The notes beneath the pieces were generated by a model, which was not told the origin of the DNA, made no database searches, and worked only from the letters and a program-made list of their open reading frames with translations. A DNA stretch of 64,000 nt, from positions 62,001 to 126,000 of IMG/VR virus record IMGVR_UViG_3300023179_004149. The stretch is one strand, 5' to 3'. Shown piece by piece: positions 436 through 59,600 of the stretch. The position numbers and the translations under genes are program-made. Position 1 is the first letter of the stretch; every line of letters begins with the position of its first letter.

Positions 436-2682
436 TTATATCGTGTCTATTAATGTTGAGATGTTATTTTCCTTTTTAACAAGAATTCTGTGGTCGGCCC
501 AATCTTGAATCAATGGATTATGACTGATAATCCAAATGTGTTCAAAGAACTGTTTGAGTTTTTCAAAAAACAGACCGACTTTTTCAAGGTTCTGGTTGGA
601 TACTTTTCCAGTAACTTCATCAAACACTATGATATTAGGTTTTGGTAATGAACATACTTTACTCAACACACATCTTAGTGCTAGAGAACTTACAGTTTTT
701 TCATACCCCGATCCCGCATTAATTGGTTTTTCAACACCTGTTTCGCTATCTACCATCCAGAACTCAACCTCACCCTTTTCATTCATGCGCATCTCAAGAA
801 CAAACTCACAACTATCAGCAAGAAGTATTTTAAGATGGCTATTAATGAGTGGTATCATAGTACTTAACACCATTTTAGAAATACCATTCTTACCGTAAAT
901 ATCCAAGTAAACCTTAAAAATGTGGTCTATCATTTCTTCGTTCTTCAACTCTTTGAGTAGTGCGTTATAACCCTCTATTTTACCATTAGCGGTCAGAATA
1001 TCTCTATCTGTTCCGTTTATTTGTAAAGATACGGTTTCTTTTTCTTCGTTCAAAGAATTCAAAGAGAATTTTATTTTTTGAATATCAGTATCTATTAACT
1101 GGTTCTTCTCAACCCTACTCTTTATATCTCTATAGTTCTTTAACTTCTCATTACCACGGATTAAGCTATCCTGATACGCTTTCAACTCTAAACGGCTTTT
1201 CTCAATTAATAAATTGTTCCTGTTATATAAATCCCAGGCTACTTTTGCTTTATCAAGACCCTCTATCTTAGTATTGGCTATTTTTATAATCTCTTGTGTT
1301 GTTTCAAGAGATTCGTTTTTCTCTTTGAGTGACGTTTCGTTTTTCTCGATTTCATCACTATGATCAACGTTGTCCAGTGCCCTTTTACAAGTCTGGCAAA
1401 TCTCACTATTCTTCAACATATCGATAGTGGCTTCAATCGTATGTATTTCCAGTTTGGTTTTTATCTCTCGTTCTGTATAATCTCGAAGCTCTCCTTTGAG
1501 AGTACCGTATAAATCAATATCATACTCAATTTTAGGTTCTGGCATAGCGTCGATAAGGTTTCTGATACTCTCTTCCTTATCTTTGATAAGAGATTCGAGT
1601 TTCTGTATACCAGTGATGATGTTTTCTTCGCTCGATTTGTATAATTCGGTATCGATATCGTTATATCGAGTTTTATATAATTTTTCTGATTCATCTGTCA
1701 ATTCGGTTATTTTGGTTTTTAGTTCGTTAAGTTTTGAGTTTAAACCAACTAACATACCTTGGTATTGTTTAATATGATCTTCTTCAAGCGTAATTTTAGC
1801 CATAATTTCTTGGCTATTGTTATAGTAAAGCTTTGATTTCTCTTTCCATTCTGTATATTTTTTCTTGGCTATCTTTTCTTTCTCACGGAAAAATTCAAGA
1901 CCTATAAACCTGGTTAATATCCTACCGCGCTCAGTTGGTTTGGTTTTAATTAAATCATCCAGATTATCACCCGTTGTTAAGATCGTAATCAAGAAATCAT
2001 CATAAGTACCAACATATGTTTTGATTAATTCATCGGTATACTTTCTTTGCTCACCATTTAATTGTTTTACGCCACCACGAGGTAAAACCTGATAAAAATC
2101 AACATCACCCTTACAAGTATGGGAACCATCTTTAGCTTTTTTTCTGGTTATTGTTCTTTTGATAATGTAGTCATCACCTTCAATCTCGACCTTACCCTTT
2201 ACCTCAACCAAATCAGAATCAAGGAATCTGTTAAAGACTTCCTCATTCTTATCTGTTTTGGTTGTAGTACCAAAAAATAAGAACAATAATAAGTCAACTG
2301 TCATAGTTGTGTTATGTGAAACAATACCATTAGTGTAATATTGCGCCACCTCGTCCACCTGAATATCATATAAATCACTTTTTTCCTCTAATAACTCAAC
2401 GCTCTTAACTAAACTCACACCATTAATTGTCTGTATGGGTTCACCAACCTTAAGAGTGTTAAGATTAATAAAGTGTCCATCCTCATGTTTCACTTTATGT
2501 AAATCAGCTCCCTCAACAACCATTGCATTTTCAAGTTCGCAACGATAAACATCAGCATTTTTTTCCGTAATACCGCACCATATTATGTCTTTATAACCAT
2601 AGGGTGTGTTTACCTTAATTCCAAGATTACCATATTTTTGATATAGCTCATTTAATTTACCAATCGTTATCTCTTTAATCAT
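436..2682 (-). CDS. sbcC: Split-intein C-fragment (124 aa) fused to the C-terminal part of Rad50/SbcC (gp46-like) ATPase
   Basis: Intein blocks B (GADLH), F (LYDIQV) and G (NGIVSHN) are followed by TTMTVD, the end of Walker A. Also long coiled coil, zinc hook CQTC, signature-like GSGYEK, Walker B IIVFDE and H-loop IISH. Confidence 0.93.
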   Translation of the reverse strand: MIKEITIGKLNELYQKYGNLGIKVNTPYGYKDIIWCGITEKNADVYRCELENAMVVEGADLHKVKHEDGHFINLNTLKVGEPIQTINGVSLVKSVELLEEKSDLYDIQVDEVAQYYTNGIVSHNTTMTVDLLLFLFFGTTTKTDKNEEVFNRFLDSDLVEVKGKVEIEGDDYIIKRTITRKKAKDGSHTCKGDVDFYQVLPRGGVKQLNGEQRKYTDELIKTYVGTYDDFLITILTTGDNLDDLIKTKPTERGRILTRFIGLEFFREKEKIAKKKYTEWKEKSKLYYNNSQEIMAKITLEEDHIKQYQGMLVGLNSKLNELKTKITELTDESEKLYKTRYNDIDTELYKSSEENIITGIQKLESLIKDKEESIRNLIDAMPEPKIEYDIDLYGTLKGELRDYTEREIKTKLEIHTIEATIDMLKNSEICQTCKRALDNVDHSDEIEKNETSLKEKNESLETTQEIIKIANTKIEGLDKAKVAWDLYNRNNLLIEKSRLELKAYQDSLIRGNEKLKNYRDIKSRVEKNQLIDTDIQKIKFSLNSLNEEKETVSLQINGTDRDILTANGKIEGYNALLKELKNEEMIDHIFKVYLDIYGKNGISKMVLSTMIPLINSHLKILLADSCEFVLEMRMNEKGEVEFWMVDSETGVEKPINAGSGYEKTVSSLALRCVLSKVCSLPKPNIIVFDEVTGKVSNQNLEKVGLFFEKLKQFFEHIWIISHNPLIQDWADHRILVKKENNISTLIDTI
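2311..2682 (-). mobile_element. Split intein C-fragment (IntC, 124 aa; +1 residue Thr)
   Basis: MIKEITIGKL...YYTNGIVSHN|T: HINT-fold motifs without block A and without an endonuclease domain. Confidence 0.9.
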
Positions 2683-3688
2683 TTGTTTTTATATTTAAAA
2701 ATTGTAAACATTTTTTTATTGTTAATTCTTTATTTTTTCTATAATCAGAATCCCATATTGTCAACACCTCATAACCCTCATCAACCGCAGCCAACTTTTT
2801 AAATTCGTCTTGCTCTTGAATTTCTTTAGCTGTTAAATTTTTTCTAAAAGGATGTGGGTAATCATCTGGTTTATATTTCGAAGGGTTACCATGATAATCA
2901 TCGCCATTATACTCAATAATTTTTTTCATTTTAATATCAGCGAAATCATATAACCACAAACCACCATTTTTTTTATTTAATCTAATTTCTTTATTTTTAG
3001 TAGCGAAATAAACATGCTCTCTGTTCTTTATTTCATATTGTTCTAAAATTAAATAAAATAATTCTTGTGATATTTTAGAGTACCCTATTTTTAAATTACC
3101 GCCAGACGATAAAGATTTTTGCCAATCAATTTGTCGTTTATTAAAAATAAATTTACCTCTTTCCTCACCATGTTTTGCGACACATTTTTCAAGTGTAAAC
3201 GTTCTCTGTTGTTCGGATATTCTATCAATAGCCTCAGCCTCCGTTAAACCCCTTTTCATCCAATATTCCTTTTTTTTGGGGGAAGCATTACCTTCTTTTT
3301 GTTTTCTTTTCTGGTATTTTAATTTACCCACAATATCACCATATTTTTCAATAAACGCCCTTTCGGTATTCATTAAATGACATTCTATTTTAAATTTAGC
3401 TTCTTCTTTGGTAAAACCTTTATCTAGCCAATAATCAATATAAACTGGTTTAAATTTCTTGATTTTTAATTCCGCTTCATCTTTAGATAAACCTCGTTGA
3501 ATCCAATAATTTACCGAATAAGCCGAACCATTTGCAATAGTTATATTATTATCTTTTAATCGTTTTACTATAACTGATTCATCAACACCAAATTCTTTTG
3601 CTATTTTTTTCGTCGATTTTAATTCTTTAGTGTAATCGGTAATGATTTTTTCAACTTGTTCTGTAGTAAATTCATATTTTTTACCCAT
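2675..3688 (-). CDS. Free-standing homing endonuclease, Vsr-like/EDxHD (DUF559-like) nuclease with N-terminal HTH and repeats
   Basis: C-terminal YDF...IIEYNGDDYHGN...GYEVLTIWDSD. N-terminal HTH (STKKIAKEFGVDESVIVKRL) and three YWxxxGxxxxEA repeats. Lies between the two intein halves. Confidence 0.85.
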   Translation of the reverse strand: MGKKYEFTTEQVEKIITDYTKELKSTKKIAKEFGVDESVIVKRLKDNNITIANGSAYSVNYWIQRGLSKDEAELKIKKFKPVYIDYWLDKGFTKEEAKFKIECHLMNTERAFIEKYGDIVGKLKYQKRKQKEGNASPKKKEYWMKRGLTEAEAIDRISEQQRTFTLEKCVAKHGEERGKFIFNKRQIDWQKSLSSGGNLKIGYSKISQELFYLILEQYEIKNREHVYFATKNKEIRLNKKNGGLWLYDFADIKMKKIIEYNGDDYHGNPSKYKPDDYPHPFRKNLTAKEIQEQDEFKKLAAVDEGYEVLTIWDSDYRKNKELTIKKCLQFLNIKTND

Positions 3689-3715
3689 ATTTATAGTTTC
3701 TTTACTATAAATATG
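3686..3715 (-). promoter_or_regulatory. Hairpin sequestering the endonuclease start codon, with a TATTTATA promoter-like motif in its 5' arm
   Basis: Coding strand CATATTTATAGT-aaagaa-ACTATAAATATG is a perfect 12-bp inverted repeat ending in the ATG. Confidence 0.8.
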
Positions 3716-3749
3716 TCCAGCTAACTAAAAAGGTAAGGGTATTGAAAAA

Positions 3750-4355
3750 TTATTTTAATTCTTCGGGTATAAAACCCAACGTTTTCAATATATAATCCTC
3801 ATTATATTCAATTGTTATATTAGTATTTTCTTTAATACATTTACCGCCATAATTTGGCGGGTCGGATATTACCGACGTAATACCGTTTTTATTTTCATAT
3901 TTGAGTTTATTACCCGAACCATACGACAAGAAATTAGAGAATTCAATCTCTTTGATTTTAAATTTCTTATATCTATTAGTTTGTTCTTTGTAATTCTCTA
4001 ATTCGATATTTACTGAGTTGTCCAGTTTGATGAGATGGGCTGTGTTAATCTCAATGTTGTTATCGATCAAGTATTGTTCGATTAACTTCTTTTGGTAGTT
4101 TTCATCTAAAATAAGCTCAGAAGCGTCCGCTCCACCCTCAGCCACAAGTTCAGAGTTCTTGCTAATAATTGGCTTAAAAATAACTTTAACTTTATTGGTC
4201 TTATACCTGTTTTGAAAATATTTTTCAATTTCTTTTTCTTTTACTTGCGAATGATTATCTAACGTATCTTCCCATATAACTTTTATATAGTTGTTACTAT
4301 CATAAATATCGTCATTTTTGGGCTTAGATGTCGTATATGTCATTGTAGTTATCAT
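3750..4355 (-). CDS. sbcC: N-terminal part of Rad50/SbcC (with ~130-aa extension) fused to a split-intein N-fragment
   Basis: FKIKEIEFSNFLSYG (typical SMC/Rad50 first strand), then GITSVISDPPNYGGK (Walker A up to the Lys), then CIKENTNI... and a stop 29 aa later. Confidence 0.9.
   Translation of the reverse strand: MITTMTYTTSKPKNDDIYDSNNYIKVIWEDTLDNHSQVKEKEIEKYFQNRYKTNKVKVIFKPIISKNSELVAEGGADASELILDENYQKKLIEQYLIDNNIEINTAHLIKLDNSVNIELENYKEQTNRYKKFKIKEIEFSNFLSYGSGNKLKYENKNGITSVISDPPNYGGKCIKENTNITIEYNEDYILKTLGFIPEELK
3753..3839 (-). mobile_element. Split intein N-fragment (IntN, 29 aa, Cys1)
   Basis: CIKENTNITIEYNEDYILKTLGFIPEELK* matches block A (C-h-x-x-x-T-x-I) directly after the Walker A Lys. 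Confidence 0.88.
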
Positions 4356-4593
4356 TTTCTATTCTTTTATTGGTTACGGTAATTGTGTTGTCTTCTTGTT
4401 TAATTTCTGGTTGAGGTGTTTCTTCTTTTCCTATCGGACTTTGTTTAATCTCAATGTCTGGTTTATTACCGTACTTAAGAACCGAAAAAGCATTCCCAAT
4501 GAGATCATTTAAAAATTTATCTGGATCGCCAATATCGTTAATCTTACAATATAATTCGATCTCATCAAGTTGTTTCTTATTAAGTTTAAGCAT
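4324..4593 (-). CDS. hypothetical protein (89 aa)
   Basis: ATG at 4593 overlaps the sbcD stop (ATGCTTAA) and is preferred over the track's TTG start at 4620. Fills the gap between sbcD and sbcC-N. Confidence 0.65.
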   Translation of the reverse strand: MLKLNKKQLDEIELYCKINDIGDPDKFLNDLIGNAFSVLKYGNKPDIEIKQSPIGKEETPQPEIKQEDNTITVTNKRIENDNYNDIYDI

Positions 4594-5386
4594 TGGTAAA
4601 TATTTCGCAACCCTCTTCAATATCCGAAAAATCAGTTATTTTGAAGGTAAGGTATTTAACGGGATTATCGATATCGTAAAGTTTATAGTCGAAACCATTA
4701 TCAGTAATAGTAAGAACACCATATCCGTGTTGGGACACAGTTTCTCCGTAATTTTGTTGAATCATGCTACCAGGATAGATAACATCTATACCTGATTTGG
4801 TTTTTAATATCTGTCTTTTGTGTATATCACCGCACATTACGATATGACAATCAGCGAACTTTTCAACGTCGACACCATGAGTAAAACTATAACCCATTTC
4901 ATTAACAGCTCCAACTATTACACCATGAAACAACCCTATTTTCTTTTTACCTTTATATGAATTATGATGTAGTTGTTCGGGTGTAGCATGACTATCAAAA
5001 ATAGAATACACGACCCAGGCTACGTCATCATCTTCAATAACATCAGACTTGGTGTAATAGTGAATATTATCCAAATCCAAGGCCTTGATGATTGGTGTTA
5101 ACGCATCCATACGCTCTTTGTTCTGTTCAACAATATCGTGATTACCAGGTATTATAATTACTTTCTTAGTTACTGACGAGCATTGAGTTAAAAACCAACT
5201 GACCTCGTTTACCAACTCAGGGCTTATTTGGTTTCTTGAATGTACTATATCACCAGCGATAACAATCCTATCAGGTTGTATCTTTTTCATTTGGTCGATA
5301 AAGTTTGAACACACAGATCTGAATTCTATGTGTCTTTGGATATTCCTAAAATGAATATCTGCAATATGCGCAATTGTTTTAATCAT
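4586..5386 (-). CDS. sbcD: Mre11/SbcD-like (gp47-like) metallophosphoesterase nuclease
   Basis: Five phosphoesterase motifs: ADIH, AGDIVH, PGNHD, FHG, GDIH. Adjacent to Rad50. Confidence 0.92.
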   Translation of the reverse strand: MIKTIAHIADIHFRNIQRHIEFRSVCSNFIDQMKKIQPDRIVIAGDIVHSRNQISPELVNEVSWFLTQCSSVTKKVIIIPGNHDIVEQNKERMDALTPIIKALDLDNIHYYTKSDVIEDDDVAWVVYSIFDSHATPEQLHHNSYKGKKKIGLFHGVIVGAVNEMGYSFTHGVDVEKFADCHIVMCGDIHKRQILKTKSGIDVIYPGSMIQQNYGETVSQHGYGVLTITDNGFDYKLYDIDNPVKYLTFKITDFSDIEEGCEIFTNA

Positions 5387-8546: not shown

Positions 8547-8578
8547 CAAAAATAAACAAAAAAAACAAAAAAACCAAA
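8547..8578 (-). promoter_or_regulatory. Possible Bacteroidota-type housekeeping promoter (-33 TTTG / -7 TAnnTTTG)
   Basis: Coding strand TTTG-N20-TATTTTTG upstream of primase. The region is T-rich, so a chance match is possible. Confidence 0.4.
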
Positions 8579-13720: not shown

Positions 13721-16434
13721 TAGAAATCTATCGTTGCTTGTATTATTAACATATCAGAATTATATTTTCTAACCAACGGTTGACTAAACTTACCTATAGC
13801 AACCAGATCGTCATCAGCGTCGTATATACCTATTTCGGTAAATGATGCTTTATCTTCATTTGGGTTAAACGTAGGGTTTGCACTATTAATGAATTGATTA
13901 GGCAATACGTTACATGTGAGTATTGTTTTATAAACCATAGCATGAATATCAGTTTCAACGTTACCGTAGAAGAAGTTTTCATCTCCGAATGTCATTCCTG
14001 TAATATTAGTTGAACTTGGGATAGAAATAAAGTTATTTACATTATAAGTTTGTCCAGAACTTACACTAAGGAAAGATTTATCGATATTAACCCTTAAATT
14101 TGCTATGTTTAACGGTGTCATACCATTATCCACGGGCTCAGTACCAAGTCCAGCAGCATCAATATAGAAATAAGTTAAATTACTTCCAGCTGTTGGTGAG
14201 AAACTTAACTGTATTCTTCTATTAGCTGTTGTACCAGTGGTAAATACACCGTAGTACGCCGAATTCAACAATTGTCCGTTATAGAATACCCACACAACAT
14301 TATTATTAGGTATTTCGTTTAAGGTTAAACATACGGCACCTGTTGATCCTGTGTATATTCCATTGGCATAAGTATACGCCAGGTAATTAGATGGTACTAC
14401 CACACTCTGTCTTATTAACGATGATGTTTGGGTCGTACCAGTTACATAGTTAATCATCAGATCCGATGTTGATACGATATCCGTGGCCTTAAACCATATT
14501 GTGGTACCAGTTGTTTGTGTGTCAATATAATATTTGTTTGAGGTACCTATTCCAGTAATTGTATTTGAAGGATCCAAAACACTACCAACGTTACTACTTG
14601 TTAAACCAGAACTAATGAATAAACTACCTATTGGTTTTTGTGAGGTTTGGTATGTGTAATAGTTAGTCCCAAGATATGTTACTGGCGTAACCGATCCTGT
14701 GCCAATGATTACCTCACTAAATAAACCAAAGTATTCTGTGTTGGTTTGGAAACCGCCGTTATATAAACATCCATTGGTCCCCACGTAGTTATTGATATTG
14801 TAATAATTCCAATCGTTTGCCGCTGGTGTGGCGTTAATATCGGTTTTTTGCCATAACATCGTAATAGCATTTGTTCTATAACCCATACCTGTAAACCCAG
14901 TATATGGCATTAAATAACTAAATTCGCTATAAGATAACCCAGTATATCCAGTTGGTTGTTGAGAAAATTGGAATGTAATGTCTTTGGCAACAGTATCTGT
15001 GTTTTTAACTGTTGCGTAATTTTCACAATGTAATCCTGTATTTCCTGATACATCAGCAAAAATGTAGCTCACGTGAAAAGCTTCGTTAGGTTGAAGTGCA
15101 CCTATCGTACTTGATTCAGGACAAACCCCAGGATTAACCATCGTCAACTGCGGGGTCGGTAATGTGTAATTCCTGTTACCCTTATAAGATAACGCAACCA
15201 ATAATTCTTGATCTTCGATTATAACAATCTTCTCGTCAACCAATACTTTACCAACAACTGTTGGTATATACTCCTGGTCTATCAAATCATAATATTTGAT
15301 TGTGTTATTAGCACCCATGTACTTAACTGTATCATCACAAACAAACGTATATCCGATATTGGTGGCTGTACTAATGCCCCCAAATTGTTTTTTATGCCAC
15401 ATTAAATACGGCACTTTTAATTTGAATGTATTACTATAAAACCCCTCAGCATAATAATTACTAACCGATTTATTAGTGTAGTGAATTATACCTATTTTGT
15501 TTTTATCTATCGTAATAAAATAATCGTAATTTATAGCCGTACCCCAATAATTTTTTGATTTATTTCCATACTTACCTTTATATAATGAGCTATCTAAACC
15601 AATTATATCATCAAGAGTAACAATTGTCATATTCCAAACTGGAATGTCATCACCAGACGGTGTGGCCCCTGTTGTGAAATTCAACATACCATTCTGCCAA
15701 TAAGCTGTTGGGTCTTGAGCGTCATAATAATCAGCTATTGTATTTGATCCTGGGTATATAAAGCCATTTACCTTGTATGAATCATACCCTGGTAGTGCTC
15801 TGTCGACCTGGAATTCGATTGCGGTTCCAGAAGTGTAACCCGATAAATTGTAGGTTGATCCGCTGTTTACCGTAACAATTGAGAACATTTCATACAAAAT
15901 AGGTTTGGGGTTTATCGTAACCCCAGATACATCCGTATAATTTGCAGTATATCCGCTTGTTTTGATCTTTAAAAACAAATAATCACCAGTATCAATGGTT
16001 GTCTTATATCCTGTGTTTTTAATGCTATTGCTGTTAAAACGCAATGTGATTTTGTTCGATATTGTGGGTGTTGTACCTGTAACATTGGAAACTAAACACA
16101 AAGAACTATCAATATCTACAGTTCCACCAGTATTATAAGTAAAAAATCCACGCTCTTTAGCAGCAGCATGAATCTCAATAGGTTTTGAGGTAATTACAGA
16201 TATTGGGTTTCTATAATTTGTTCCACTACTTGGAACTGGGTATTGCACATCGTGTTGTGAATCCGCTGGTCTTAAAATGTTTATTAAGCTAGGATCATCG
16301 GACGAGTAATCCATCTCACCATCCCCCAGGGTAAAGTTTACAAACGACAGAGATCCGTTAGATAGATTTCTCCTACCTTTATTAGTTAACTTCAAATTAA
16401 CCAACGGGTCGGTTTTTTTTATTATATAGCTCAT
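13720..16434 (-). CDS. large tail-fibre/baseplate protein (tail-collar-like N and C termini)
   Basis: N-terminal LTNKGRRNL...FTLGDGEMDY and C-terminal FTEIGIYDADDDLVAIGKFSQPL. Confidence 0.65.
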   Translation of the reverse strand: MSYIIKKTDPLVNLKLTNKGRRNLSNGSLSFVNFTLGDGEMDYSSDDPSLINILRPADSQHDVQYPVPSSGTNYRNPISVITSKPIEIHAAAKERGFFTYNTGGTVDIDSSLCLVSNVTGTTPTISNKITLRFNSNSIKNTGYKTTIDTGDYLFLKIKTSGYTANYTDVSGVTINPKPILYEMFSIVTVNSGSTYNLSGYTSGTAIEFQVDRALPGYDSYKVNGFIYPGSNTIADYYDAQDPTAYWQNGMLNFTTGATPSGDDIPVWNMTIVTLDDIIGLDSSLYKGKYGNKSKNYWGTAINYDYFITIDKNKIGIIHYTNKSVSNYYAEGFYSNTFKLKVPYLMWHKKQFGGISTATNIGYTFVCDDTVKYMGANNTIKYYDLIDQEYIPTVVGKVLVDEKIVIIEDQELLVALSYKGNRNYTLPTPQLTMVNPGVCPESSTIGALQPNEAFHVSYIFADVSGNTGLHCENYATVKNTDTVAKDITFQFSQQPTGYTGLSYSEFSYLMPYTGFTGMGYRTNAITMLWQKTDINATPAANDWNYYNINNYVGTNGCLYNGGFQTNTEYFGLFSEVIIGTGSVTPVTYLGTNYYTYQTSQKPIGSLFISSGLTSSNVGSVLDPSNTITGIGTSNKYYIDTQTTGTTIWFKATDIVSTSDLMINYVTGTTQTSSLIRQSVVVPSNYLAYTYANGIYTGSTGAVCLTLNEIPNNNVVWVFYNGQLLNSAYYGVFTTGTTANRRIQLSFSPTAGSNLTYFYIDAAGLGTEPVDNGMTPLNIANLRVNIDKSFLSVSSGQTYNVNNFISIPSSTNITGMTFGDENFFYGNVETDIHAMVYKTILTCNVLPNQFINSANPTFNPNEDKASFTEIGIYDADDDLVAIGKFSQPLVRKYNSDMLIIQATIDF

Positions 16435-16446
16435 TATATTTTTATA

Positions 16447-16454
16447 ATAAATAG
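16447..16454 (-). promoter_or_regulatory. CTATTTAT phage promoter-like motif
   Basis: Recurring intergenic motif, 13 nt upstream of the ATG at 16434. Confidence 0.6.
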
Positions 16455-16468
16455 ATTTATTTTAACTT

Positions 16469-19400
16469 TTAAAGCTGTGTTGTTTTAATATTAATATTTT
16501 TTACGTTAAATACGTTTTTTGTTTCTACTGTACTTAATGAAATGTTTTCCACCCCAGCGAGAGTTATGTTAATTGTACTATTTGTTGATACATTTTTCAA
16601 TGTTATTACCCTGGTTTCCACATTATTTTCTACACTTATTGACGTCTGTACAAATGCTGTGTTAATTACTGAATCATTTACGAATATTGCTAAATTATCA
16701 ATCGTACCCGATTTAAACGTTGTCTGTTTTTTCGACGTAGAGTAACTTAACATAATCTGTAGATCCGTTTGTGGTATTATACTAAATTTATTATCATATG
16801 TTGTGTATTTATTAACAACATAGTTTTGCGTTATTGGTAATAAATTACTATCTGCCGTTAATACAGATAAGTTAGCTGAAGCATTAGATGATTGGTTAAT
16901 TATCAATCTAACCGTATATGTGTTCAATATTTGAGCTGCCGCAGCAATTGATGCCTTTGGAGTAAGCGTAGTTGTTCTATTTAACTTATCCAGATTCGTA
17001 TTAAATAGCATACCGAAAATAGTTGTTGCCTGGTGACCACAGGCATTTGTTGCTGTTAATTTACCCATAAATTCGCCAGTAACGGGATAACCCACCTGAT
17101 CTTTCGGATAATAGTAATCCATAATAATATCGGTTCCGTTTAATCTGAAATCAAATTCACCGTATTGCGTTACAATTCTTCTGTTTTCATCGGTTACATC
17201 ATAAAACTTATTCAGGGCCGTAACCAATTTAGCATTCGTCGTCGTACCGCTAAATGATTTGCTGGTAAATCCTGTTTTCAAGTTTAAGGAATTATTATAG
17301 AAATATAAATCATTTGTCACCCCCGTAGTTAATGTTTCAATTGTTGATTCGAACACTTCAACGCGAGTTCTATCTTTATAGAACGTAAAATTATTTACTA
17401 AACAGAAATCGCGTTCTTCCCAATTCGTTATATCTAATGCGGGTTCTGTTACACCAGATGCGACAGTAACCGCATCTGGGTTTACATACTTATATAGAAC
17501 ACCTCTGTTAACACTATATTTTTTGGAGTGGAACAATGATGAGGTATCGAAAGTAATTAAATTAGGTGTAACGAACAACCCTGGGTTGTTCCTTTCGTCT
17601 TCTCGACATAATCTTTCAAACAACGGCATTAAACCAATTGCCTCACCCTGGTAAGGTCGTAAATAATACGATCTTGTGTTAAACGAAGCGTCAGTAAAAC
17701 CAGATGCTATTTTAATCGGGTTATACGGTACTGATGGTTTCAAATAAATGTTTGAAACCCCAAGTCTTGAAATACCAAACACGTCATTATAGTTTGTACC
17801 CTCGACTTCGCCGTCACCAGTTGTCATACCCATGGTTGAGCCCGTATAGTAACCCTTTCCAAAAGTACCGTTTGTGTAATAACCGTTGTTGTTTAATATC
17901 TTATTTTGCGTTATAATTTCATAATTATCCAATATGTCATATGATCTATCAATGAATATATGATTTGGTAATAATACACTATTCCAACGACTACTTTCTG
18001 ATGTATAACCACTAACTGAACCCGTTGCAATATAAGGTGTGTTATTTGTAACTGGTAACGTTTTTGGTAATCTGGATGCTGTTGAGCTAAAGTTATATAC
18101 GTTACCCTCATCAACATACGGTACCCAAGAAGAACCTAAGAATGTATAGGTCGTAACACCACTCGCACCAATACCACCAGTTTCACCACTCGCAGCAAGC
18201 GATCTGTGGCTAAATAATTCACTGGTTAATTTAGTCCAATATGTTGTGTTAGATACTGATGTGCCCGATGGCACCGTCGTCTTAGCGTAGAAATACCTAT
18301 ATACCGTCGATGACCCTTCCGTTACTCCGCTTGTTACGAATTCCCCACGAGTATATACTCGTGTTGGTTCATACGTGGTTGATTTATTGTAAACGTATCT
18401 AAAGAATATATTCGTACCAGTATATGTTGCCAGGATTAAATCACCAAATGAATAACTCATAGGTGATGTGGTATCGAATGAAACAATATTACGATATACG
18501 TAATCAATAACGTTAGGTGTTGGGTAACCGTTAACCATACTTTCTTCGTAACCCCAAGGAGTGAAGTTGGCTGGGTTATAACGTTCCAATTCAATAAAAC
18601 ATGATCTCGATCCTCTCGGTCTGTAAATTGGGTGTATTGAACCTGTTGTACCTGTTGTTGAGTAACAATGTGATGTATGTATCTCATTGATACACACATA
18701 TAACTTATATTTTGTTTCCGTCACTATTGTACTACCAGAAACCATTTTATAATCCTCAATCGCCACTTTAACAATATCATTCAACTCATAGTTAATGATC
18801 TGTTCGTTAAACTCTGGAACTGTTGATAACAGATCCTGGTATAGCTCAGTTGAATACACATCATTTTCCTTAGCGTAATATTGGAAGATTGTAGCTCCCG
18901 TTGTATTAAGTATGCCCGTATAGTATCTTCTGTTTAATCTAATTTGATTTAATATATTAGTCGAATAATTCAATTGTGTGTAATCGTTCAACCCATCACC
19001 ATAAGATATAAATGTCTTAGTCGCCGTTGTAGTCGATGTACCCAATGCAGTACCGTTAAGATATGTGTTTTGTGGTACATAATTTACTGTTCTATTATGG
19101 TTTAATAAACGTCTACTTACATTTTTACCAATACTGATTGTGTTGGCTATATTACTGAATTCTGTTTGCTTAGGTGTATTACCCAAATAGTAATCAAAAT
19201 AATTGAAGTCATATGATACTGGTCGACCATTAACACCCGTGGCCGTTGTTGTACCACTTGATGCTGTAATTTCACCAGAATAATCATATATTTTACTTCT
19301 TACACTAAATGTGAAATCAATTTTATCATTACCCAATGGCTTATCATATTCCTTGGTATTGTATTCCAATGTACCAGTTGTAAACTTTTTATAGTAATCC

Positions 19401-34735: not shown

Positions 34736-37684
34736 TTATTTAACCTCACATCCAGACGCTCCGCAGGCTAACTCACCTGTAAGGTCCGTATTATCATCGA
34801 ATTCAATTACCTTTGATAAATCTATATTGGTTAATGATTTCATCATCCCATCATACTGTTCCTTTGTACAGTCGGAAAACGGTGCCTGAATGTAACTACC
34901 ACCATCATAAGGTAATACTGATAAACCATTGTAAAACTCTTTATTTTCCCACATCCATAAACCAACAAGATCCCATTCGTTTTCTTTAATGTTAATTGTT
35001 GCCGATACGTTATGTGTGTTTTCACCTTTTCTGTGACCAGTTCTGATCCATTCCTTACTTACCTTTTTAACCCTTTCCAAAGTAGAAATAGCTGATTCGG
35101 TTCTTAAGATTGAATCTTTTGGTGCCATCTGTGGTACGCTGATTACAGCCGTATCGTGTGGGCGGAAGTACTCGTCTTCAACCAATTCTGGATGGTATGT
35201 TGCCAAGTAATAATAAATCGCTTCATTCTTACCAACACGGATTCTACGTATATAGTAATCGTTGTGCCAAGCGTGGATACCAGATGATGTACCAAGAACC
35301 AATGAAGATGTGCCCGATGGTTTAACTGTTGTTGATCTCGCAGCTGCATTTATACCTATTAAAGCAGCAACACGTGCGTTTTCTTCTTTTACGATATTAG
35401 CGGCTTCAACCATATCATATTCAAGTACAACACCTGAACCAATACCAGTCATGCCAACACCTATTAGGGCCTCTTTTTCGGTTGTTCTCTTCCATATCTC
35501 ACGTAAGTAATGGAAGTCAGTATAACCAGCCTGTAATGTACCTATAAACGCAGCGGCTTTAACTCTTTCGTTGTAATCCTCTTGTGAAACAATATCTGAA
35601 ACATTTACCTCAGTCAAATTACAAAATTGATTTGGTCTTAACGAAATTTCACAATTATGAGCTGAGACACCATTTAAATCAAATTCATGTACATCATCGA
35701 CAGTTACATCATAAACATCCTCAACAGCATCAACTTCAATCGATATAATTTCATCATAAAATCGTGTTCTATTGTATTTCCTCTTATATCCAGATAAAAT
35801 AGTTTTTAATTTATTTTTTTTAATTGGTTCATCAAAACCAATAATTTGATTATATATTTGAATATTATCGTTACTAATAATTAATTCAAATAACTCTTTA
35901 CAGAAATAATCGGATTTAGAACCTTTACCGTTTGGTAGTGATTTAAATTTTTCATTACTCCTTTTAAAAATTGAAGATACTATACCAAACCTAATTAATA
36001 TTCTTTGTACCCTTTTCAAAAGATTTTCATCAGCTTGTGTGAGTCTAATAGAATAACCTTTTATAAAATTACCCTGAACAGACCCGTCAGCATCAAATAA
36101 CCCTCTTAATAAACCCTGTAAAAAAACGTAAGAGGCGCTTTCTATTTTATCCGTTATTTTCTTATTACCATAAATAACATCGAACTTATTGGCTAACTTA
36201 CTAATGCCAACACATTTGATTCTTTTTTTATCATAATTGGTTATGTCTTGAATTTGTAGATCTGACCTGTGATCAACATTATCGATAATTCTTTTATAAG
36301 CTATTTCAGACATAACATCTTTAGTTTCACCCCAAAAATCAAGTGAACTATCGTTGATTGTCATAGCACCATCACCTATTAACGAACCTAAAATCCAACC
36401 CTCATCAAAACTACCATTGCCAGACCACTTATGTATATCTCTATGGTTTGAAAGTGATATTTTATCACCTATTTTCAAATCTTTTAATTCTTTCCATTCA
36501 TTAAGTAATAATTTTCTTGTTAATTTAGAAATATATTTTAACTTATGATCATTAGTTATTCTAAATTGGTATCCCTTTTTAGTAGTGACTTTATATAATT
36601 GTTTCGTTCCCGTTTTCCAAAAACCGTTCGATAACGTATTATACATTTTACCATTACTAACACAATTAAAATTAGTATTTACCAAATCAGTTACTAATTT
36701 AGCCCCAGTATCTGTCATAACCCACGAATCACCAGCCACACAGCATGGATTGGTTCCGAGACTCTTATCATTTGTAAAAAAAATACCTGGCTCACCTGAA
36801 CCTGATAATTCAATTCGTTTCCATAAATCATCAAAAAAATCTTTTGTTATACGGTGTCTTAATAAGACAGCCGAATTGTTAGCGCGACCTCTCTGTGGAT
36901 TAGATTCCCACCATTCGCCAGACTTACATGAGATCATCTCATCATCATCAGCGGAGAATAAACAAATTAACGCGGCCCTACGAATACCACCAGCTAAAAC
37001 AGCGTCGGCAATATAACAAACCATATCATGCACTTCTATCGAAGTTAATCTGTCACCATCATTTTTACTATCTAAAATCTTTTTTACGTTATGGATACAG
37101 TCTTTTAATGGTTGAGGGCCTGGTGCCTTACCACCAGATGTTATTAATCTAGCTCCCTTTGGTCGTATATCAGAATAATCAAATTGTGGTGTTGATGTTA
37201 TATCGCCAGTATACGATTTAAATAATACCTTAATTGCATCAGCCCAACCTTCAATAGAATCATTTATTAAAAACCTTCTGTTTCTATCCGCTTTTGGTTT
37301 ACGTATATCGGGTAATTTCTCAATATCATGTTTCTGTACTGAATAACCAACACCAGTACCACCCAATAATAAAAACATTATCTCAGCAAATGTATCGATA
37401 TGGTCTATTGGGGTGTAAGCACAATTAAATATCCTATTAGGTGATATTTCGATTGGTTTGCCGCCGAATTGAAGTGATCTCATGGAAGGTAGTACCTTCT
37501 TGTTATAAACCATCTGGTAGTTTTTTATTATCTCGTCTTTCAACATTGGATACTTTTTAATGTGCATATCCATGTTCCTGGTTACTAATTCATTCCAGGT
37601 CTCTCTTCGTTTCTCATCTGGAAGATACTTGGCGTACTTCATGTACACCGTAATTTCGCTTAAAATCTCTTGTGATAAATCCAT
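34736..37684 (-). CDS. nrdJ: Class II (B12-dependent) ribonucleotide reductase with intein
   Basis: PSMRSL, FNCAY, GGIRRAALI, GTNPC|CEISL (spliced), TVKPSGT and C-terminal ACGASGC. Spliced length 619 aa. Confidence 0.95.
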   Translation of the reverse strand: MDLSQEILSEITVYMKYAKYLPDEKRRETWNELVTRNMDMHIKKYPMLKDEIIKNYQMVYNKKVLPSMRSLQFGGKPIEISPNRIFNCAYTPIDHIDTFAEIMFLLLGGTGVGYSVQKHDIEKLPDIRKPKADRNRRFLINDSIEGWADAIKVLFKSYTGDITSTPQFDYSDIRPKGARLITSGGKAPGPQPLKDCIHNVKKILDSKNDGDRLTSIEVHDMVCYIADAVLAGGIRRAALICLFSADDDEMISCKSGEWWESNPQRGRANNSAVLLRHRITKDFFDDLWKRIELSGSGEPGIFFTNDKSLGTNPCCVAGDSWVMTDTGAKLVTDLVNTNFNCVSNGKMYNTLSNGFWKTGTKQLYKVTTKKGYQFRITNDHKLKYISKLTRKLLLNEWKELKDLKIGDKISLSNHRDIHKWSGNGSFDEGWILGSLIGDGAMTINDSSLDFWGETKDVMSEIAYKRIIDNVDHRSDLQIQDITNYDKKRIKCVGISKLANKFDVIYGNKKITDKIESASYVFLQGLLRGLFDADGSVQGNFIKGYSIRLTQADENLLKRVQRILIRFGIVSSIFKRSNEKFKSLPNGKGSKSDYFCKELFELIISNDNIQIYNQIIGFDEPIKKNKLKTILSGYKRKYNRTRFYDEIISIEVDAVEDVYDVTVDDVHEFDLNGVSAHNCEISLRPNQFCNLTEVNVSDIVSQEDYNERVKAAAFIGTLQAGYTDFHYLREIWKRTTEKEALIGVGMTGIGSGVVLEYDMVEAANIVKEENARVAALIGINAAARSTTVKPSGTSSLVLGTSSGIHAWHNDYYIRRIRVGKNEAIYYYLATYHPELVEDEYFRPHDTAVISVPQMAPKDSILRTESAISTLERVKKVSKEWIRTGHRKGENTHNVSATINIKENEWDLVGLWMWENKEFYNGLSVLPYDGGSYIQAPFSDCTKEQYDGMMKSLTNIDLSKVIEFDDNTDLTGELACGASGCEVK
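35654..36742 (-). mobile_element. Canonical intein with LAGLIDADG endonuclease in NrdJ, 363 aa
   Basis: CVAGDSWV...ITNDH...LGSLIGDG...LRGLFDADG...VYDVTV...SAHN|C. Confidence 0.95.
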
Positions 37685-37734: not shown

Positions 37735-37779
37735 AAAAACAAAATTTTATAATTGTTATATTTTAATTATAAAATTTTG
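37735..37779 (-). terminator. AT-rich 15-bp inverted repeat followed by U-tract, probable terminator after helicase
   Basis: CAAAATTTTATAATT-N10-AATTATAAAATTTTG followed by TTTTT on the coding strand. Confidence 0.5.
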
Positions 37780-56600: not shown

Positions 56601-59600
56601 ATCATTGGTTGAACACCAATACCTTCTGGGTTTAAATCCCAAACCAAAGGATCATAACTAATATTCAAATTAGTTATAAGCATTTTGGTATTATACATAT
56701 CACCCAATCTTAATACACATATAGGTGGTTTACCGAATGCAGTATTTGATGCGTCACAAGTATCTGTTTGGCTACGTTTAATGGTATTACCTGGTCTCAT
56801 ACACTGTTGTAGGAAAGTCAATCTACTATTTAAACCTTCTGGTGTCATCGAGTGCATACCTGGAATGAAGTATTTTAACTTCTCTTTCATACTTTTATAA
56901 ACAGTGGGTGCATCTTCTTTTAATACTTCAAAATAATCACATTCTGTAATTAGTTTATCTAATATTCTTTGAGCTATATCTCTTTTAGTGATATTAGTAT
57001 TATCTAACGTCTTCAATGAGGCTACCGTAATAGTTTCTGGTTTTTTAACTGCTTCTGGTTTATTTGGTATTACTGGTTTTATTTGTGGTGTAACAGTAAT
57101 ATCAACTCTTCTCGCATATGAACTTTCTATCGATAAAGCACCACATACTGTATCAGCATATGTATAAGCTGTTTTACCCGCTGGGTTAAACGTACCAATT
57201 TGTGTTTTATCAACAGTTTCAGTAACACCTATTTTAGTTGGATCTGTAATATAAGTATTTTTTATATCACTTGTTTCAAAACAATAACAATCTTTTTTTG
57301 TTAGTTTATCTTCTGATGGTGCATTACGAACCATGAAGTAAACGTCACCAGAAGTTGTCTTCAGGTTAGTCGCTGTTGGGTTAATTTTACTTATCGCTTC
57401 AGTAAATGATATTACTGTTGATGCATTAATATTAAATGTGATTTTATCTCTGGTGTTATTAGGTTGTGCTGGGTTAGCGGGTGCTTCTCTCCATACCACT
57501 AAAGAAGTTGTTACATCCTCTAAAATAGAGTCAATATTACTTTTGGTTATTTCATCACCCGCTTGATCCTTATTAAATATCTTATTGGTTGCCGATCCCA
57601 TTATATTATCGGTTAATAACCATTTAATAACCGATTTAGCTCTTCTAATACCTAAATTTTTATTATATTCAGATGGTAATTTAGAACCTAGAGCACTAGA
57701 ATATGCTGTTAAGTTAATAGATAAATCAAAATTATTATATTTTGAATCTTTTAACTCATTAATTACATCTGTTTGTTGTTTATTAAAACCATAATATGGT
57801 TCGGTATGATCTGTGGCCATAAAATAGTTATCCCCACTATCAATACCTAACGTATAAAAATATCTTAACCACTCTGAATTAACAGCATATTTATCATTGG
57901 TTTTTTTAACCGCCTGTGCGTTGGTTGAGATGTCAGATAAATTTAATTTCTTATATTGATCAAAATACACACCGAATGATTCAATAGTACCACCGTAAAC
58001 ACCTGTTTTAGTGCTATATACTGTTGGGTCTAACGGAACATCATTTTCGAAAAATAACCCCTTTGTGAAACTTGGTGGTGGTGTTAAATCATTTGTATTA
58101 TTGAAAGTGGGTTCATCCACAGATTTATTCACTAAAGCGTTAGTAAATTGTGGTGTTAATAAATCATTTGGTTTTGATTTATTAACACCATTTAAGACCG
58201 CTTTGAAATATTCGATATCTGATTGTGAGAATTGATTCCATATTCTTGCAAGTTCAAAAATATCAAACTCCTGGCAACCAGCCCAGAAAGCGTTTAATAT
58301 CTCATCAACTTCACCATCAGTCAATTTAGCCAGTTCTTTTTTAACTAAAAGATTCAAAATACTTGGATGGTCAACAACTATCTTAAATGATATCGTACCA
58401 CTCCTTTCAGTATTATTGTAAGTGTATATTGGTTCTGGTCTACCCAAGAACTGGTGAGTTGTCCAATTTGAAGAGGTGTCATCAGTGAATTTAATATCAT
58501 ATGGCGGGAACCACATAATTCTACCACCATTCGGGCCAATTTCACATTTTTTTAATTCTTTTTGTTGTTGTGAATCTCTCCAAGCCAGGTTTTCTATCGA
58601 GAACATGTATTTCTTAGCTGATCCACCATTTACATTAAGTTCACTTGGAAATATATTTAAATTACCAAATCTATCCAATACTGAATTTCTTTCACGTCTA
58701 ATTAATTCTTTATATCTTATTGCACCCGTTATATTTGAATATGACCTACCTTTAGTCCAAACACGACACAACTCGGCTTGTTCATACATTTTCTTATCAT
58801 CACGCTTACCTGTTTCATCTAAACCAGGAACTATGTATCTGTTACCTATCGTATCACCTTTTGAATTTTTCTTAGGTATTACTTTTGGTTTTATTGTTGC
58901 GTTAGCTCTTGATGTAAAACTATACCCGTCGTAAAACTTAGTAAGTGTTTGGTCAATTGGTGAGTTGTATTGATTATTAATCGATTTATCCAATAATCTT
59001 TGTGTTTTATCTAAAATAGAACATTCGATAAAATTAATATTATTTGATAGACTATCCTTGTTTCTAATACGATTTGATGGTGTTAATGTGCTGCCAGTTT
59101 CACCTTTTAACACAAAAACTTTTTCGGTTGCTGCATTCTTTGACCAAACAAAATTAGTTTCAATAGAACCATATTCGGATACTTGATTATAGCCTGGTTC
59201 TATTTTATTTATCTGTTCTATTGTATTACCATACACACTACTCGTTATTAACGCCTCAGTAACTTTATCATTTGTATTAACAATATCACCATCAGAATCT
59301 TGCATAAGATAAAACGGATCAATCTTATCCTTTTTACTACCAATATAATAATCACCAACAGGCCTTTTGCCAGAACCCAAACCTAAGAATGCCGTTACAC
59401 CTCTTATTATTTGAGCAACCGACTCACCCGCCTGGAATAAACCACTTTTGTAATCATTCGTATAATTTGGTGAATATTTGTTAATCGATATATTTGCAAA
59501 TAAAGCCGCCTTTTGACCGTCACCAGTATGATTTAAAAAATACATGTCACGTTCATTTCTGGCTGTTCTACCACTAAGATCACTAATAAACTTACCAAAA

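What the first reader, a model, noticed from the sequence alone, without database searches (positions are those of the whole stretch)
3686..3715. Promoter-in-hairpin switch on the endonuclease start codon
Seen: CATATTTATAGT-aaagaa-ACTATAAATATG is a perfect 12-bp stem. Its 3' arm carries the ATG and its 5' arm carries the TATTTATA motif found upstream of other genes. Established: T-even homing endonucleases such as I-TevI are silenced on early read-through transcripts by a hairpin and are translated from a late promoter that omits the 5' arm. Inference: the same logic operates here with a different promoter and no Shine-Dalgarno. Because IntC-Rad50 overlaps the endonuclease stop, the switch could also time assembly of active Rad50.
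Basis: partly seen in the sequence, partly recalled or inferred. Interest (0 to 1): 0.72.

Follow-up and report, generated by a model that had tools for sequence, protein, structure and literature searches.

The report
Promoter-in-hairpin gate on homing endonuclease
A perfect 12-bp hairpin ties a phage promoter motif to the start codon of a homing-endonuclease gene that splits the phage's rad50, so the enzyme is probably made only from its own promoter; this repeats a trick known from phage T4, here in a giant freshwater phage whose host uses no Shine-Dalgarno sites.

Summary
On the minus strand, 3715->3686 is a perfect 12-bp stem with a 6-nt loop (-10.5 kcal/mol, z = -8.3). Its 3' arm holds the ATG of a 337-aa Vsr-like homing endonuclease gene (HEG). 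Its 5' arm holds TATTTATA.

TATTTAT is the most enriched upstream motif in this 321-kb phage. It sits 25-19 nt before about 40 start codons. That is the same register as the -7 box of 57 host-type (Bacteroidota) promoters. It is also conserved upstream of the HEG in 20 homologous rad50 cassettes.

The same design (motif in the 5' arm, ATG in the 3' arm) recurs at the split terminase gene and at two or three other genes. The three strongest cases all lie downstream of a co-oriented host-type promoter.

The best reading is a T4 I-TevI/mobE-type translational gate, with confidence about 0.6. No transcript data exist. The ATG-covering stem is missing from many homologous cassettes, although stems that pair the motif are enriched and are specific to the sense strand.

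Hairpins with late promoters upstream of HEGs in "fractured genes" were described in 2009, so this is a new member of a known kind. The suggested timing of Rad50 assembly is unsupported.

The parts
3686..3715 (-). Perfect 12-bp stem with a 6-nt loop (the finding). As RNA it is -10.5 kcal/mol.
3704..3715 (-). 5' arm of the hairpin. It carries the TATTTATA motif (3713..3706), which starts 25 nt before the ATG, the canonical position of this motif in the genome.
3698..3703 (-). Loop (AAAGAA). The inferred transcription start region is about 12 nt after the first T of the motif, by analogy with the host -7 box register. This is inferred, not mapped.
3686..3697 (-). 3' arm. It contains the leader positions -9..-1 and the ATG (3688..3686) of the endonuclease gene.
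3717..3737 (-). Conserved intergenic block just 5' of the motif. It is T-rich and is a degenerate inverted copy of the 21 nt of rad50 that abut the intein insertion point. It could be a -35-like element or an operator; its role is undecided.
2675..3688 (-). Free-standing homing endonuclease gene, 337 aa, with N-terminal helix-turn-helix repeats and a C-terminal Vsr-like (I-Bth0305I-type) nuclease domain.
3750..4355 (-). Rad50/SbcC N-terminal fragment that ends in Walker A ..NYGGK, followed by a 29-aa N-intein (3839..3753, starting with Cys).
436..2682 (-). 124-aa C-intein (2682..2311, ending ..SHN, with Thr at +1) fused to the rest of Rad50/SbcC. Its ATG overlaps the last 8 nt of the endonuclease gene.
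8547..8578 (-). Host-type (Bacteroidota) promoter, TTTG, a 20-nt spacer, then TATTTTTG. It heads the co-oriented, terminator-free gene string that runs through mre11 and rad50-N into the hairpin.
4586..5386 (-). Mre11/SbcD-like phosphoesterase, in the same transcription direction and upstream of rad50-N.

Best explanation
The hairpin is a translational gate of the kind known from phage T4. A host-type early promoter about 4.9 kb upstream makes long transcripts that run through mre11 and rad50-N into the endonuclease gene. These transcripts contain both arms, so the 12-bp stem forms and buries the AUG and the nine leader bases before it. In an organism without Shine-Dalgarno sites, where initiation depends on an unstructured A-rich leader, this should block initiation. 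The 5' arm is itself the core (-7/-10-like) element TATTTATA of a second, phage-specific promoter class, which also serves virion genes and other endonuclease genes. RNA started from that promoter begins in or just after the loop, lacks the 5' arm, is unstructured, and is translated.

Shown: the stem, the motif's enrichment, register and conservation, the recurrence of the design, the upstream promoter, and the absence of a terminator.

Inferred: that the motif is a promoter, where transcription starts, the timing class, and the effect on translation.
For: (1) Structure. The stem is -10.5 kcal/mol with z = -8.3, and RNA starting in the loop folds at only -0.5 kcal/mol. The stem is kept in a 211-nt context.

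(2) The motif behaves as a promoter element.
- It is the top upstream 8-mer.
- It peaks at -25..-19 from the ATG in about 40 genes.
- That is the same register as the -7 box of 57 TTTG-N19/20-TAnnTTTG promoters, whose box starts at -29..-22. In Flavobacterium that box spans -12..-5 from the transcription start (PMC6847099).
- It is present in both directions between divergent genes.
- It is upstream of the large terminase subunit, adaptor, protease, baseplate wedge and tail fibre genes and of two further endonuclease genes.

(3) The motif and an upstream block are conserved before the HEG in 20 homologous rad50 cassettes whose HEGs are only 44-63% identical.

(4) The design recurs in this genome.
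- The N-terminal terminase fragment has 12 bp of Watson-Crick pairs (14 bp with G-U); gene 16374..16697 has 12 bp with two G-U pairs; gene 218749..221382 has 10-11 bp.
- Two Watson-Crick stems of 12 bp or more were observed against 0.01 expected from leader shuffles.
- Six of the seven longest ATG-covering stems in the genome carry the motif in the 5' arm.

(5) The three strongest hairpins all lie downstream of a co-oriented host-type promoter. Genes with such a promoter upstream have stronger stems: Mann-Whitney p = 0.013, and post-hoc Fisher p = 0.006.

(6) An RNA-level function is favoured over a DNA-level one.
- Stems that pair the motif are enriched in homologous cassettes, with mean -5.4 against -3.0 kcal/mol, and 0 of 300 null sets reach this.
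- They are much stronger on the sense strand than on the antisense strand, for example -9.9 vs -0.2, -11.1 vs -2.2 and -10.2 vs -3.7.
- In the closest terminase relative, an outer U-G pair is replaced by C-G.
- The shared half-sites are 12 nt apart at the HEG and 8 nt apart at the terminase gene.

(7) There is no terminator between the upstream promoter and the hairpin.

(8) Precedent exists for I-TevI, I-TevII, I-TevIII, segB, Aeh1 mobE and the T4 genes soc, e, 25 and 26 (PMC2988022), and for fractured-gene HEGs (PMC2677866).

(9) In Bacteroidota, initiation is tuned by secondary structure and by upstream adenines (PMC6847099). The genome shows the A-rich -14..-10 signature.
Against: - No RNA run was listed for this phage, so no 5' end or expression timing is known.
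- That the motif is a promoter is an inference. Its fixed distance to the ATG would also fit an RNA-level signal.
- The ATG-covering stem is not a conserved property of the cassette. L003, L005, L009 and L012 have essentially no structure (0 to -3.4 kcal/mol). In L013, L020, L021 and L023 the 3' arm ends 3-7 nt before the ATG.
- The terminase hairpin is likewise limited to this phage and one 95%-identical relative.
- Two other endonuclease genes with the same motif in this genome have no significant hairpin.
- The fourth hairpin gene follows a strong terminator, where read-through should be rare.
- The only close variants (97-98% identical cassette) show no change in the 30 nt, which is uninformative.
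- The stem is almost all A-U and only moderately stable.
Confidence: 0.6

Rival explanations
1. The palindrome has no regulatory role. It is a by-product of an A/T-rich leader next to a T/A-rich motif, perhaps sharpened by template-switch (quasi-palindrome) mutation, and it persists because the cassette spread recently.
For: - The ATG-covering stem is absent in many homologous cassettes and in most terminase homologues.
- The motif and A-rich leaders are partly self-complementary, and leader shuffles already give -2 to -5 kcal/mol.
- The cassette is nearly identical in a phage whose rad50 exteins are only 88% identical, so there has been little time for decay.
Against: - Two perfect 12-bp stems were found where 0.01 are expected.
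- Six of the seven longest ATG-covering stems carry the motif.
- Hairpin strength is associated with an upstream host-type promoter.
- Sense-strand-specific stems with G-U pairs arose with different sequences in several cassette lineages.
Confidence: 0.2
2. The inverted repeat works as DNA. It could be an operator for a dimeric regulator or for the endonuclease's own helix-turn-helix domain, repressing the promoter it overlaps. Alternatively it could be a two-way promoter whose mirror copy (3688-3695, + strand) fires antisense into rad50-N.
For: - The palindrome is perfect, so both strands are equivalent here.
- The HEG has N-terminal helix-turn-helix repeats.
- I-TevI represses its own late promoter through an operator that resembles its homing site (PMC2988022).
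- The block just upstream (3717-3737) resembles, in inverted orientation, the rad50 sequence at the insertion point. It matches 12 of 21 nt here, 16 of 21 in L182 and L007, and sits in the same register in 17 of 21 cassettes.
- Palindromic motif pairs do occur between divergent genes.
Against: - The shared half-sites are 12 nt apart at the HEG and 8 nt apart at the terminase gene.
- In homologues the pairing relies on G-U pairs and vanishes on the other strand.
- What is constant across cases is 'motif paired with start region', not a sequence.
- The + strand copy lacks the upstream T-tract and the downstream A-run of the motif consensus, and it has no gene to serve.
- The hairpin itself shows no similarity to the homing site. 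Only the neighbouring block does, and without cassette-specific covariation (matched pairs 12.58, mismatched pairs 12.57).
Confidence: 0.12
3. The hairpin is an RNA end or processing element. It could be a 3' stabiliser of the rad50-N message, an RNase site, or a weak terminator that uncouples rad50-N from the downstream genes.
For: - It lies 34 nt after the rad50-N stop codon, in an intergenic gap.
- The 211-nt region is unusually structured, with z = -5.1.
Against: - No U-tract follows the stem, which has only two G-C pairs. The scan found no terminator here.
- A 12-bp stem is shorter than typical RNase III substrates (established knowledge).
- Termination here would cut off IntC-Rad50, which is needed to rebuild Rad50.
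- This reading does not explain why the 3' arm is the start codon in four genes.
Confidence: 0.05

Closest known systems
I-TevI (phage T4 td intron endonuclease) and the other T-even cases: I-TevII, I-TevIII, segB, Aeh1 mobE, and the T4 late genes soc, e, 25 and 26 (PMC2988022)
   Same: - A late-expressed gene is embedded in an earlier polycistronic unit.
- A hairpin hides the translation initiation region on read-through RNA.
- A promoter placed at the hairpin makes RNA too short to form it.
- Both endonuclease genes and virion genes use the device. Here these are the HEG and the large terminase subunit gene.
   Different: - The promoter element is TATTTATA in the sense strand, not the gp55-type TATAAATA. 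TATAAATA appears only as the complement in the 3' arm, abutting the ATG.
- There is no Shine-Dalgarno site to hide, so the AUG and the A-rich leader are paired instead.
- The host is a Bacteroidota by its promoter type.
- Nothing has been tested experimentally.
Fractured genes: split-intein halves around a free-standing Vsr-like endonuclease gene (Dassa et al. 2009, PMC2677866)
   Same: - The three-ORF layout is identical: N-extein plus N-intein, then the HEG, then C-intein plus C-extein overlapping the HEG's end.
- The nuclease is Vsr-like.
- A hairpin lies upstream of the HEG start and contains a phage promoter element. That paper reports this for 15 of 16 loci, 10 of them with TATAAATA.
   Different: - The host gene is rad50/sbcC (T4 gp46 type), which is not among the host genes quoted from that paper. 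Its SbcD-like case has no intein.
- The intein is split very asymmetrically (29 + 124 aa).
- The promoter motif differs.
- The genome context is a 321-kb freshwater phage, not marine metagenome reads.
I-Bth0305I / E. coli Vsr endonuclease fold
   Same: The C-terminal domain of the model matches Vsr (1vsr, 1cw0; probability 0.97-0.98) and the I-Bth0305I catalytic domain (3r3p; probability 0.89). E259, D263, H266 and D313 are invariant in 36 homologues.
   Different: - No sequence-level match to any solved structure.
- Pfam hits are below threshold.
- The long N-terminal helical DNA-binding part is unrelated to Vsr.
I-TevI autorepression operator (Edgell et al. 2004, as reviewed in PMC2988022)
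   Same: A sequence next to, or overlapping, the HEG's own promoter resembles the homing site. Here it is the block 3717-3737 against the 21 nt of rad50 before the insertion point.
   Different: - The resemblance is inverted and weaker in this window (12 of 21, against 15 of 20 for I-TevI).
- It shows no cassette-specific covariation.
- Binding is untested.

Membership tests
T4-type promoter-in-hairpin translational switch | A stable local hairpin pairs the translation initiation region on RNA that comes from upstream. | tested here: met
   A 12-bp stem includes the AUG and positions -9..-1. It is -10.5 kcal/mol with z = -8.3 and is kept in a 211-nt fold. This is in silico only.
T4-type promoter-in-hairpin translational switch | A promoter lies inside or at the hairpin, so that its transcripts lack the 5' arm. 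| tested here: inconclusive
   TATTTATA fills the 5' arm. The motif is enriched and position-locked, sits in the register of the host -7 box, and is conserved in 20 cassettes. The transcription start is unmapped, and no RNA run was listed.
T4-type promoter-in-hairpin translational switch | An upstream promoter of an earlier class, with read-through into the gene. | tested here: met
   A host-type TTTG-N20-TAnnTTTG promoter lies at 8547-8578(-). There are six co-oriented genes, no terminator and no intervening TATTTAT promoter. Timing class is inferred.
T4-type promoter-in-hairpin translational switch | The hairpin sequesters a Shine-Dalgarno sequence. | tested here: not met
   There is no SD here or genome-wide (12 of 410 genes, equal to random). 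The start codon itself is paired.
T4-type promoter-in-hairpin translational switch | A gp55-type late promoter TATAAATA in the sense strand upstream of the start. | tested here: not met
   The sense motif is TATTTATA. TATAAATA shows no comparable positional peak, and here it abuts the ATG, too close to serve it.
T4-type promoter-in-hairpin translational switch | Translation is repressed on long RNA and active on short RNA. | not testable with these tools
   This needs reporter fusions, toeprinting or ribosome profiling.
Fractured gene (split intein plus free-standing HEG) | The upstream ORF ends with an N-intein that starts with Cys/Ser directly after a conserved extein motif. | tested here: met
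   ..NYGGK|CIKEN.., a 29-aa N-intein. The same junction occurs in 20 homologous cassettes.
Fractured gene (split intein plus free-standing HEG) | The downstream ORF starts with a C-intein ending in HN, followed by a nucleophilic +1 residue, and it overlaps the HEG's end. | tested here: met
   The 124-aa C-intein ends ..VSHN|T. There is a weak Intein_splicing hit (E = 0.003). The overlap with the HEG is 8 nt.
Fractured gene (split intein plus free-standing HEG) | Uninterrupted alleles of the host gene exist and match across the junction. | tested here: met
   792-797-aa Rad50 proteins are 89-96% identical to the C-extein. Locus L183 reads ..NYGGK|TTMTVD.. without an insert.
Vsr-like (I-Bth0305I-type) homing endonuclease | A Vsr-type nuclease fold with conserved acidic and histidine catalytic residues. 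| tested here: met
   Foldseek probability is 0.97-0.98 to Vsr and 0.89 to I-Bth0305I, but E-values are weak (0.19-0.83) because the query has several domains. E259, D263, H266 and D313 are invariant. Hits to DUF559 and REase_MTES_1575 fall below threshold. Cleavage is untested.
Intrinsic terminator | A G+C-rich stem followed by a U-tract. | tested here: not met
   The stem has two G-C pairs in 12 and is followed by GGGUAAAAAA. The scan did not call it.
I-TevI-type autorepression operator | A promoter-overlapping sequence that resembles the endonuclease's homing site. | tested here: inconclusive
   The hairpin itself shows no similarity beyond chance. The adjacent block 3717-3737 matches the inverted N-flank at 12-16 of 21 positions, in the same register in 17 of 21 cassettes. 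The shuffled null has mean 10.9 and a 99th percentile of 14, and there is no covariation.

The most novel reading that the evidence does not exclude
Giant T4-related phages of Bacteroidota may run their temporal programme with a two-part grammar that has not been described. The first part is a phage-specific TATTTATA promoter placed exactly where the host -7 box sits, perhaps read by the phage sigma factor encoded two genes beyond rad50. The second part is a set of stems that pair this promoter element with the AUG wherever such a gene lies behind a host-type early promoter. This would show that structure-only gating of initiation works, and is selected, in a Shine-Dalgarno-free translation system. 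In addition, the homing endonuclease may repress its own promoter through an inverted mimic of its rad50 target.
Probability: 0.35. Interest if true: 0.55.

Novelty: new member of a known kind. Interest (0 to 1): 0.4.

Why it matters
If confirmed, it would extend the classic T4 device for delaying translation of late genes and selfish endonucleases to a very distant giant phage. That phage's host starts translation without Shine-Dalgarno pairing and uses a different promoter grammar, so the logic would be general rather than a T-even peculiarity.

It also gives a compact, testable element (about 60 nt) for studying how mRNA structure alone controls initiation in Bacteroidota. It points to a candidate phage promoter class (TATTTATA) that could be used to annotate timing classes in uncultured freshwater jumbo phages.

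For mobile-element biology, the locus is a clean, currently polymorphic example of a fractured rad50 gene, with empty and occupied alleles in near-identical phages.

Tried and rejected
- **DNA search in the phage collection.** A DNA search of window 2600-4400 found no match.
- **Single-sequence pattern search.** A search for the HEG in viral contigs found nothing. The alignment-based search worked.
- **RNA evidence.** No RNA run was listed. DNA runs gave only a 97% variant with an unchanged hairpin, which is uninformative.
- **Covariation in homologous cassettes.** The ATG-covering stem is not conserved, so no pairwise covariation test on a common structure was possible. I used energy against shuffles and sense against antisense folding instead.
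- **Rfam.** No known RNA family lies in 2500-5000.
- **Sigma-70 promoter and terminator scan.** Counts are at chance level, and nothing falls at the hairpin.
- **Operator idea for the hairpin itself.** It shows no similarity to the IntN/IntC junction or to the empty-allele site beyond chance. Only the neighbouring block shows similarity.
- **Long-range RNA pairing.** Pairing between the rad50 N-flank and that block is not predicted in the 211-nt fold.
- **Solved structures.** A profile search for the HEG gave no hit, so fold comparison was needed.
- **Pfam on the rad50-N fragment.** There was no meaningful hit. Its identity rests on uninterrupted homologues.
- **Conserved AAA after the motif.** I first read it as a start-site signal, then dropped that reading. 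All genes show an A-rich -14..-10 region, which is a translation feature of Bacteroidota.
Full report
**1. What is there**

The window is bases 62001-126000 of a 320,934-bp virus record. DNA runs that hold it come from freshwater lake metagenomes. Around the finding all genes lie on the minus strand.

Read on that strand, positions 3715 down to 3686 form a perfect 12-bp inverted repeat with a 6-nt spacer. The last three bases of the 3' arm are the ATG of ORF 2675..3688(-), 337 aa. The 5' arm contains TATTTATA at 3713..3706. The start codon is genuine, because 36 homologues align from residue 1, with Met1 invariant and Gly2 nearly so.

As RNA, the 30-mer folds at -10.5 kcal/mol, against -0.9 +/- 1.2 for shuffles, and none of 200 shuffles folds as well. 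The stem survives in 91-nt and 211-nt contexts. Perfect repeats of this size are about 40 times more frequent in the genome than in random sequence of the same composition. Most of them are terminators.

**2. The genes**

- The upstream ORF 3750..4355(-) ends ..NYGGK, followed by a 29-aa peptide that starts with Cys.
- The downstream ORF 436..2682(-) begins with 124 aa ending ..VSHN|T, followed by an SbcC/Rad50-like ATPase.
- Proteins 89-96% identical to that ATPase part are 792-797 aa long and uninterrupted. In locus L183 they read ..NYGGK|TTMTVD.. across the junction.

The locus is therefore a rad50 (T4 gp46-type) gene broken by a very asymmetric split intein, with a free-standing gene between the intein halves. 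Mre11 lies just upstream.

The middle gene has N-terminal helix-turn-helix repeats and a C-terminal domain. The predicted fold of that domain matches Vsr endonuclease and the catalytic domain of homing endonuclease I-Bth0305I. E259, D263, H266 and D313 are invariant.

This is exactly the 'fractured gene' arrangement of Dassa et al. 2009 (PMC2677866). A second contig (L182) has exteins only 88% identical but a cassette 98-100% identical, which indicates recent spread.

**3. The motif**

In the whole genome, TATTTAT(A) is the most enriched 8-mer upstream of ORFs. Its position is sharp: 29 copies start at -25..-21 from the ATG and 7 more at -20..-16. At the endonuclease gene it starts at -25.

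The genome also carries 57 copies of the Bacteroidota housekeeping promoter TTTG-N19/20-TAnnTTTG upstream of genes. They are clustered among small genes at 220-300 kb, and their -7 box starts at -29..-22 from the ATG. TATTTAT therefore occupies the same register as a known core promoter element. In Flavobacterium that element ends 5 nt before the transcription start (PMC6847099).

The motif precedes the large terminase subunit, head-tail adaptor, prohead protease, baseplate wedge and tail fibre genes. It also precedes two further endonuclease genes, a ribonucleotide reductase and a PhoH-like gene.

It is conserved, together with an upstream T-rich block, in front of the endonuclease gene in 20 homologous rad50 cassettes from other phages. 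It is also conserved at -23..-20 from the ATG, GTG or TTG start of more than 20 distinct terminase homologues.

I read it as the core of a phage-specific promoter class, probably middle or late. This is an inference, and no paper in the library links this motif to a phage promoter.

The genome has no Shine-Dalgarno signal. It shows the A-rich -14..-10 leader typical of Bacteroidota.

**4. Does the hairpin matter?**

There are four lines of indirect evidence.

(a) The design is not unique.
- At the N-terminal fragment of the large terminase gene, which is itself split by an intein, a 12-bp Watson-Crick stem (14 bp with G-U) joins the motif to the ATG.
- Gene 16374..16697 has a 12-bp stem with two G-U pairs, and gene 218749..221382 has a 10-11-bp stem.
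- With leaders shuffled, 0.01 perfect stems of 12 bp or more are expected, and two are seen.
- Six of the seven longest ATG-covering stems in the genome have the motif in the 5' arm, although only about a tenth of genes carry the motif.

(b) Position in the transcription map fits the model. The three strongest hairpins all lie behind a co-oriented host-type promoter, with no other TATTTAT promoter in between. Across 40 motif genes, those in that situation have stronger stems (Mann-Whitney p = 0.013). For the endonuclease gene that promoter is at 8547-8578(-), six genes upstream, and no terminator lies between them.

(c) RNA beginning after the motif is unstructured, at -0.5 kcal/mol.

(d) In the homologous cassettes, stems that pair the motif are enriched (mean -5.4 against -3.0 kcal/mol for shuffles). 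They use different 3' arms in different lineages, contain G-U pairs, and largely vanish on the antisense strand. This favours RNA over a DNA palindrome. The half-sites shared by the endonuclease and terminase palindromes are 12 and 8 nt apart, which is also hard to reconcile with one dimeric DNA-binding protein.

**5. What weakens it**

- No RNA run was listed, so neither the transcription start nor the timing is known.
- The stem that covers the ATG is specific to this cassette lineage. Cassettes L003, L005, L009 and L012 are essentially unstructured, and in several others the 3' arm stops 3-7 nt before the ATG.
- The terminase hairpin is shared only with a 95%-identical relative, where one outer U-G pair has become C-G.
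- Two other endonuclease genes with the motif lack a hairpin.
- Near-identical variants carry no change in the 30 nt, which says nothing either way.

**6. Comparison with what is known**

Similar arrangements of promoter and hairpin are described for I-TevII, I-TevIII, segB and mobE of phage Aeh1. RBS sequestration by an RNA structure has been shown for the T4 genes soc, e, 39, 25 and 26. All of these lie on long transcripts with earlier genes (PMC2988022).

For fractured genes specifically, Dassa et al. found hairpins upstream of 15 of 16 endonuclease genes, ten of them containing the late promoter TATAAATA, and proposed the same control.

The present case differs in three ways:
- the promoter element is TATTTATA in the sense strand, and TATAAATA is only its complement in the 3' arm, abutting the ATG;
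- there is no Shine-Dalgarno site, so the AUG and the leader are paired;
- the host gene (rad50) and the Bacteroidota host lineage are different.

I file it as a new member of a known kind.

**7. The Rad50-timing idea**

Nothing supports it. The overlap of the endonuclease stop with the IntC start is generic for fractured genes. The IntC-Rad50 start has adenines at -6, -12 and -13 of its own, so independent initiation on early RNA is plausible. It cannot be excluded without expression data.

**8. Verdict**

The finding is of moderate interest, mainly as a transfer of a T4 principle to a Shine-Dalgarno-free system and as a pointer to an undescribed phage promoter class.

Noticed in passing
G000:C1:174691-174722 (locus L089:2192-2223, outside the window): The large terminase gene is also fractured. 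A 333-aa N-fragment ends in a short N-intein. It is followed by a 793-aa ORF holding the C-intein, more terminase sequence and a second, complete intein with a LAGLIDADG domain. The start codon of the N-fragment sits in a 12-bp perfect stem (14 bp with G-U) whose 5' arm is the TATTTAT motif, directly behind a gene driven by a host-type promoter.
   Followed up: yes
Whole genome; in the window at 8547-8578(-): There are 57 copies of the Bacteroidota housekeeping promoter TTTG-N19/20-TAnnTTTG upstream of genes, mostly small genes at 220-300 kb. There are no Shine-Dalgarno sites, and leaders are A-rich at -14..-10. The host is therefore very probably a member of Bacteroidota, and these are probably the early promoters.
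   Followed up: partly
window 3717-3737(-); loci L003-L027, L182: The conserved block just upstream of the endonuclease promoter is a degenerate inverted copy of the 21 nt of rad50 (Walker A codons) that abut the intein insertion point. It matches 12 of 21 positions here and 16 of 21 in L182 and L007, in the same register in 17 of 21 cassettes. It could be an I-TevI-like operator. There is no cassette-specific covariation.
   Followed up: partly
loci L182 and L183; window 436-4355: The rad50 cassette is polymorphic among near-identical phages. L183 has an uninterrupted rad50 (the empty allele). L182 has rad50 exteins only 88% identical but an intein-endonuclease cassette 98-100% identical, a signature of recent homing or transfer. 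L182 and a variant in run X4 share a TTT>CCG change at 3728-3730.
   Followed up: partly
G000:C1:61023-61814 (just before the window start; also in L003, L182, L183): A 263-aa sigma-70-family factor (regions 2 and 4) is encoded two genes downstream of rad50 and is conserved in relatives. It is a candidate reader of the TATTTATA promoters.
   Followed up: no
window 37740-37779 and 58151-58190: Two further perfect inverted repeats (15 bp with a 10-nt loop, and 16 bp with an 8-nt loop). The first lies 56-95 nt upstream of the start of the 982-aa ribonucleotide reductase gene (34736..37684, minus strand). Their function was not examined.
   Followed up: no
G000:C1:304996-305025 (outside the window): A 13-bp perfect stem in which the TATTTAT motif lies in the 3' arm instead of the 5' arm, upstream of gene 304474..304986(-). 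This is a different configuration, perhaps a two-way promoter.
   Followed up: no
loci L110-L167 (terminase homologues): Most related phages start the terminase gene with TTG or GTG, 20-23 nt after the TATTTAT motif. An out-of-frame ATG sits immediately after the motif, which would mislead simple ORF callers.
   Followed up: partly
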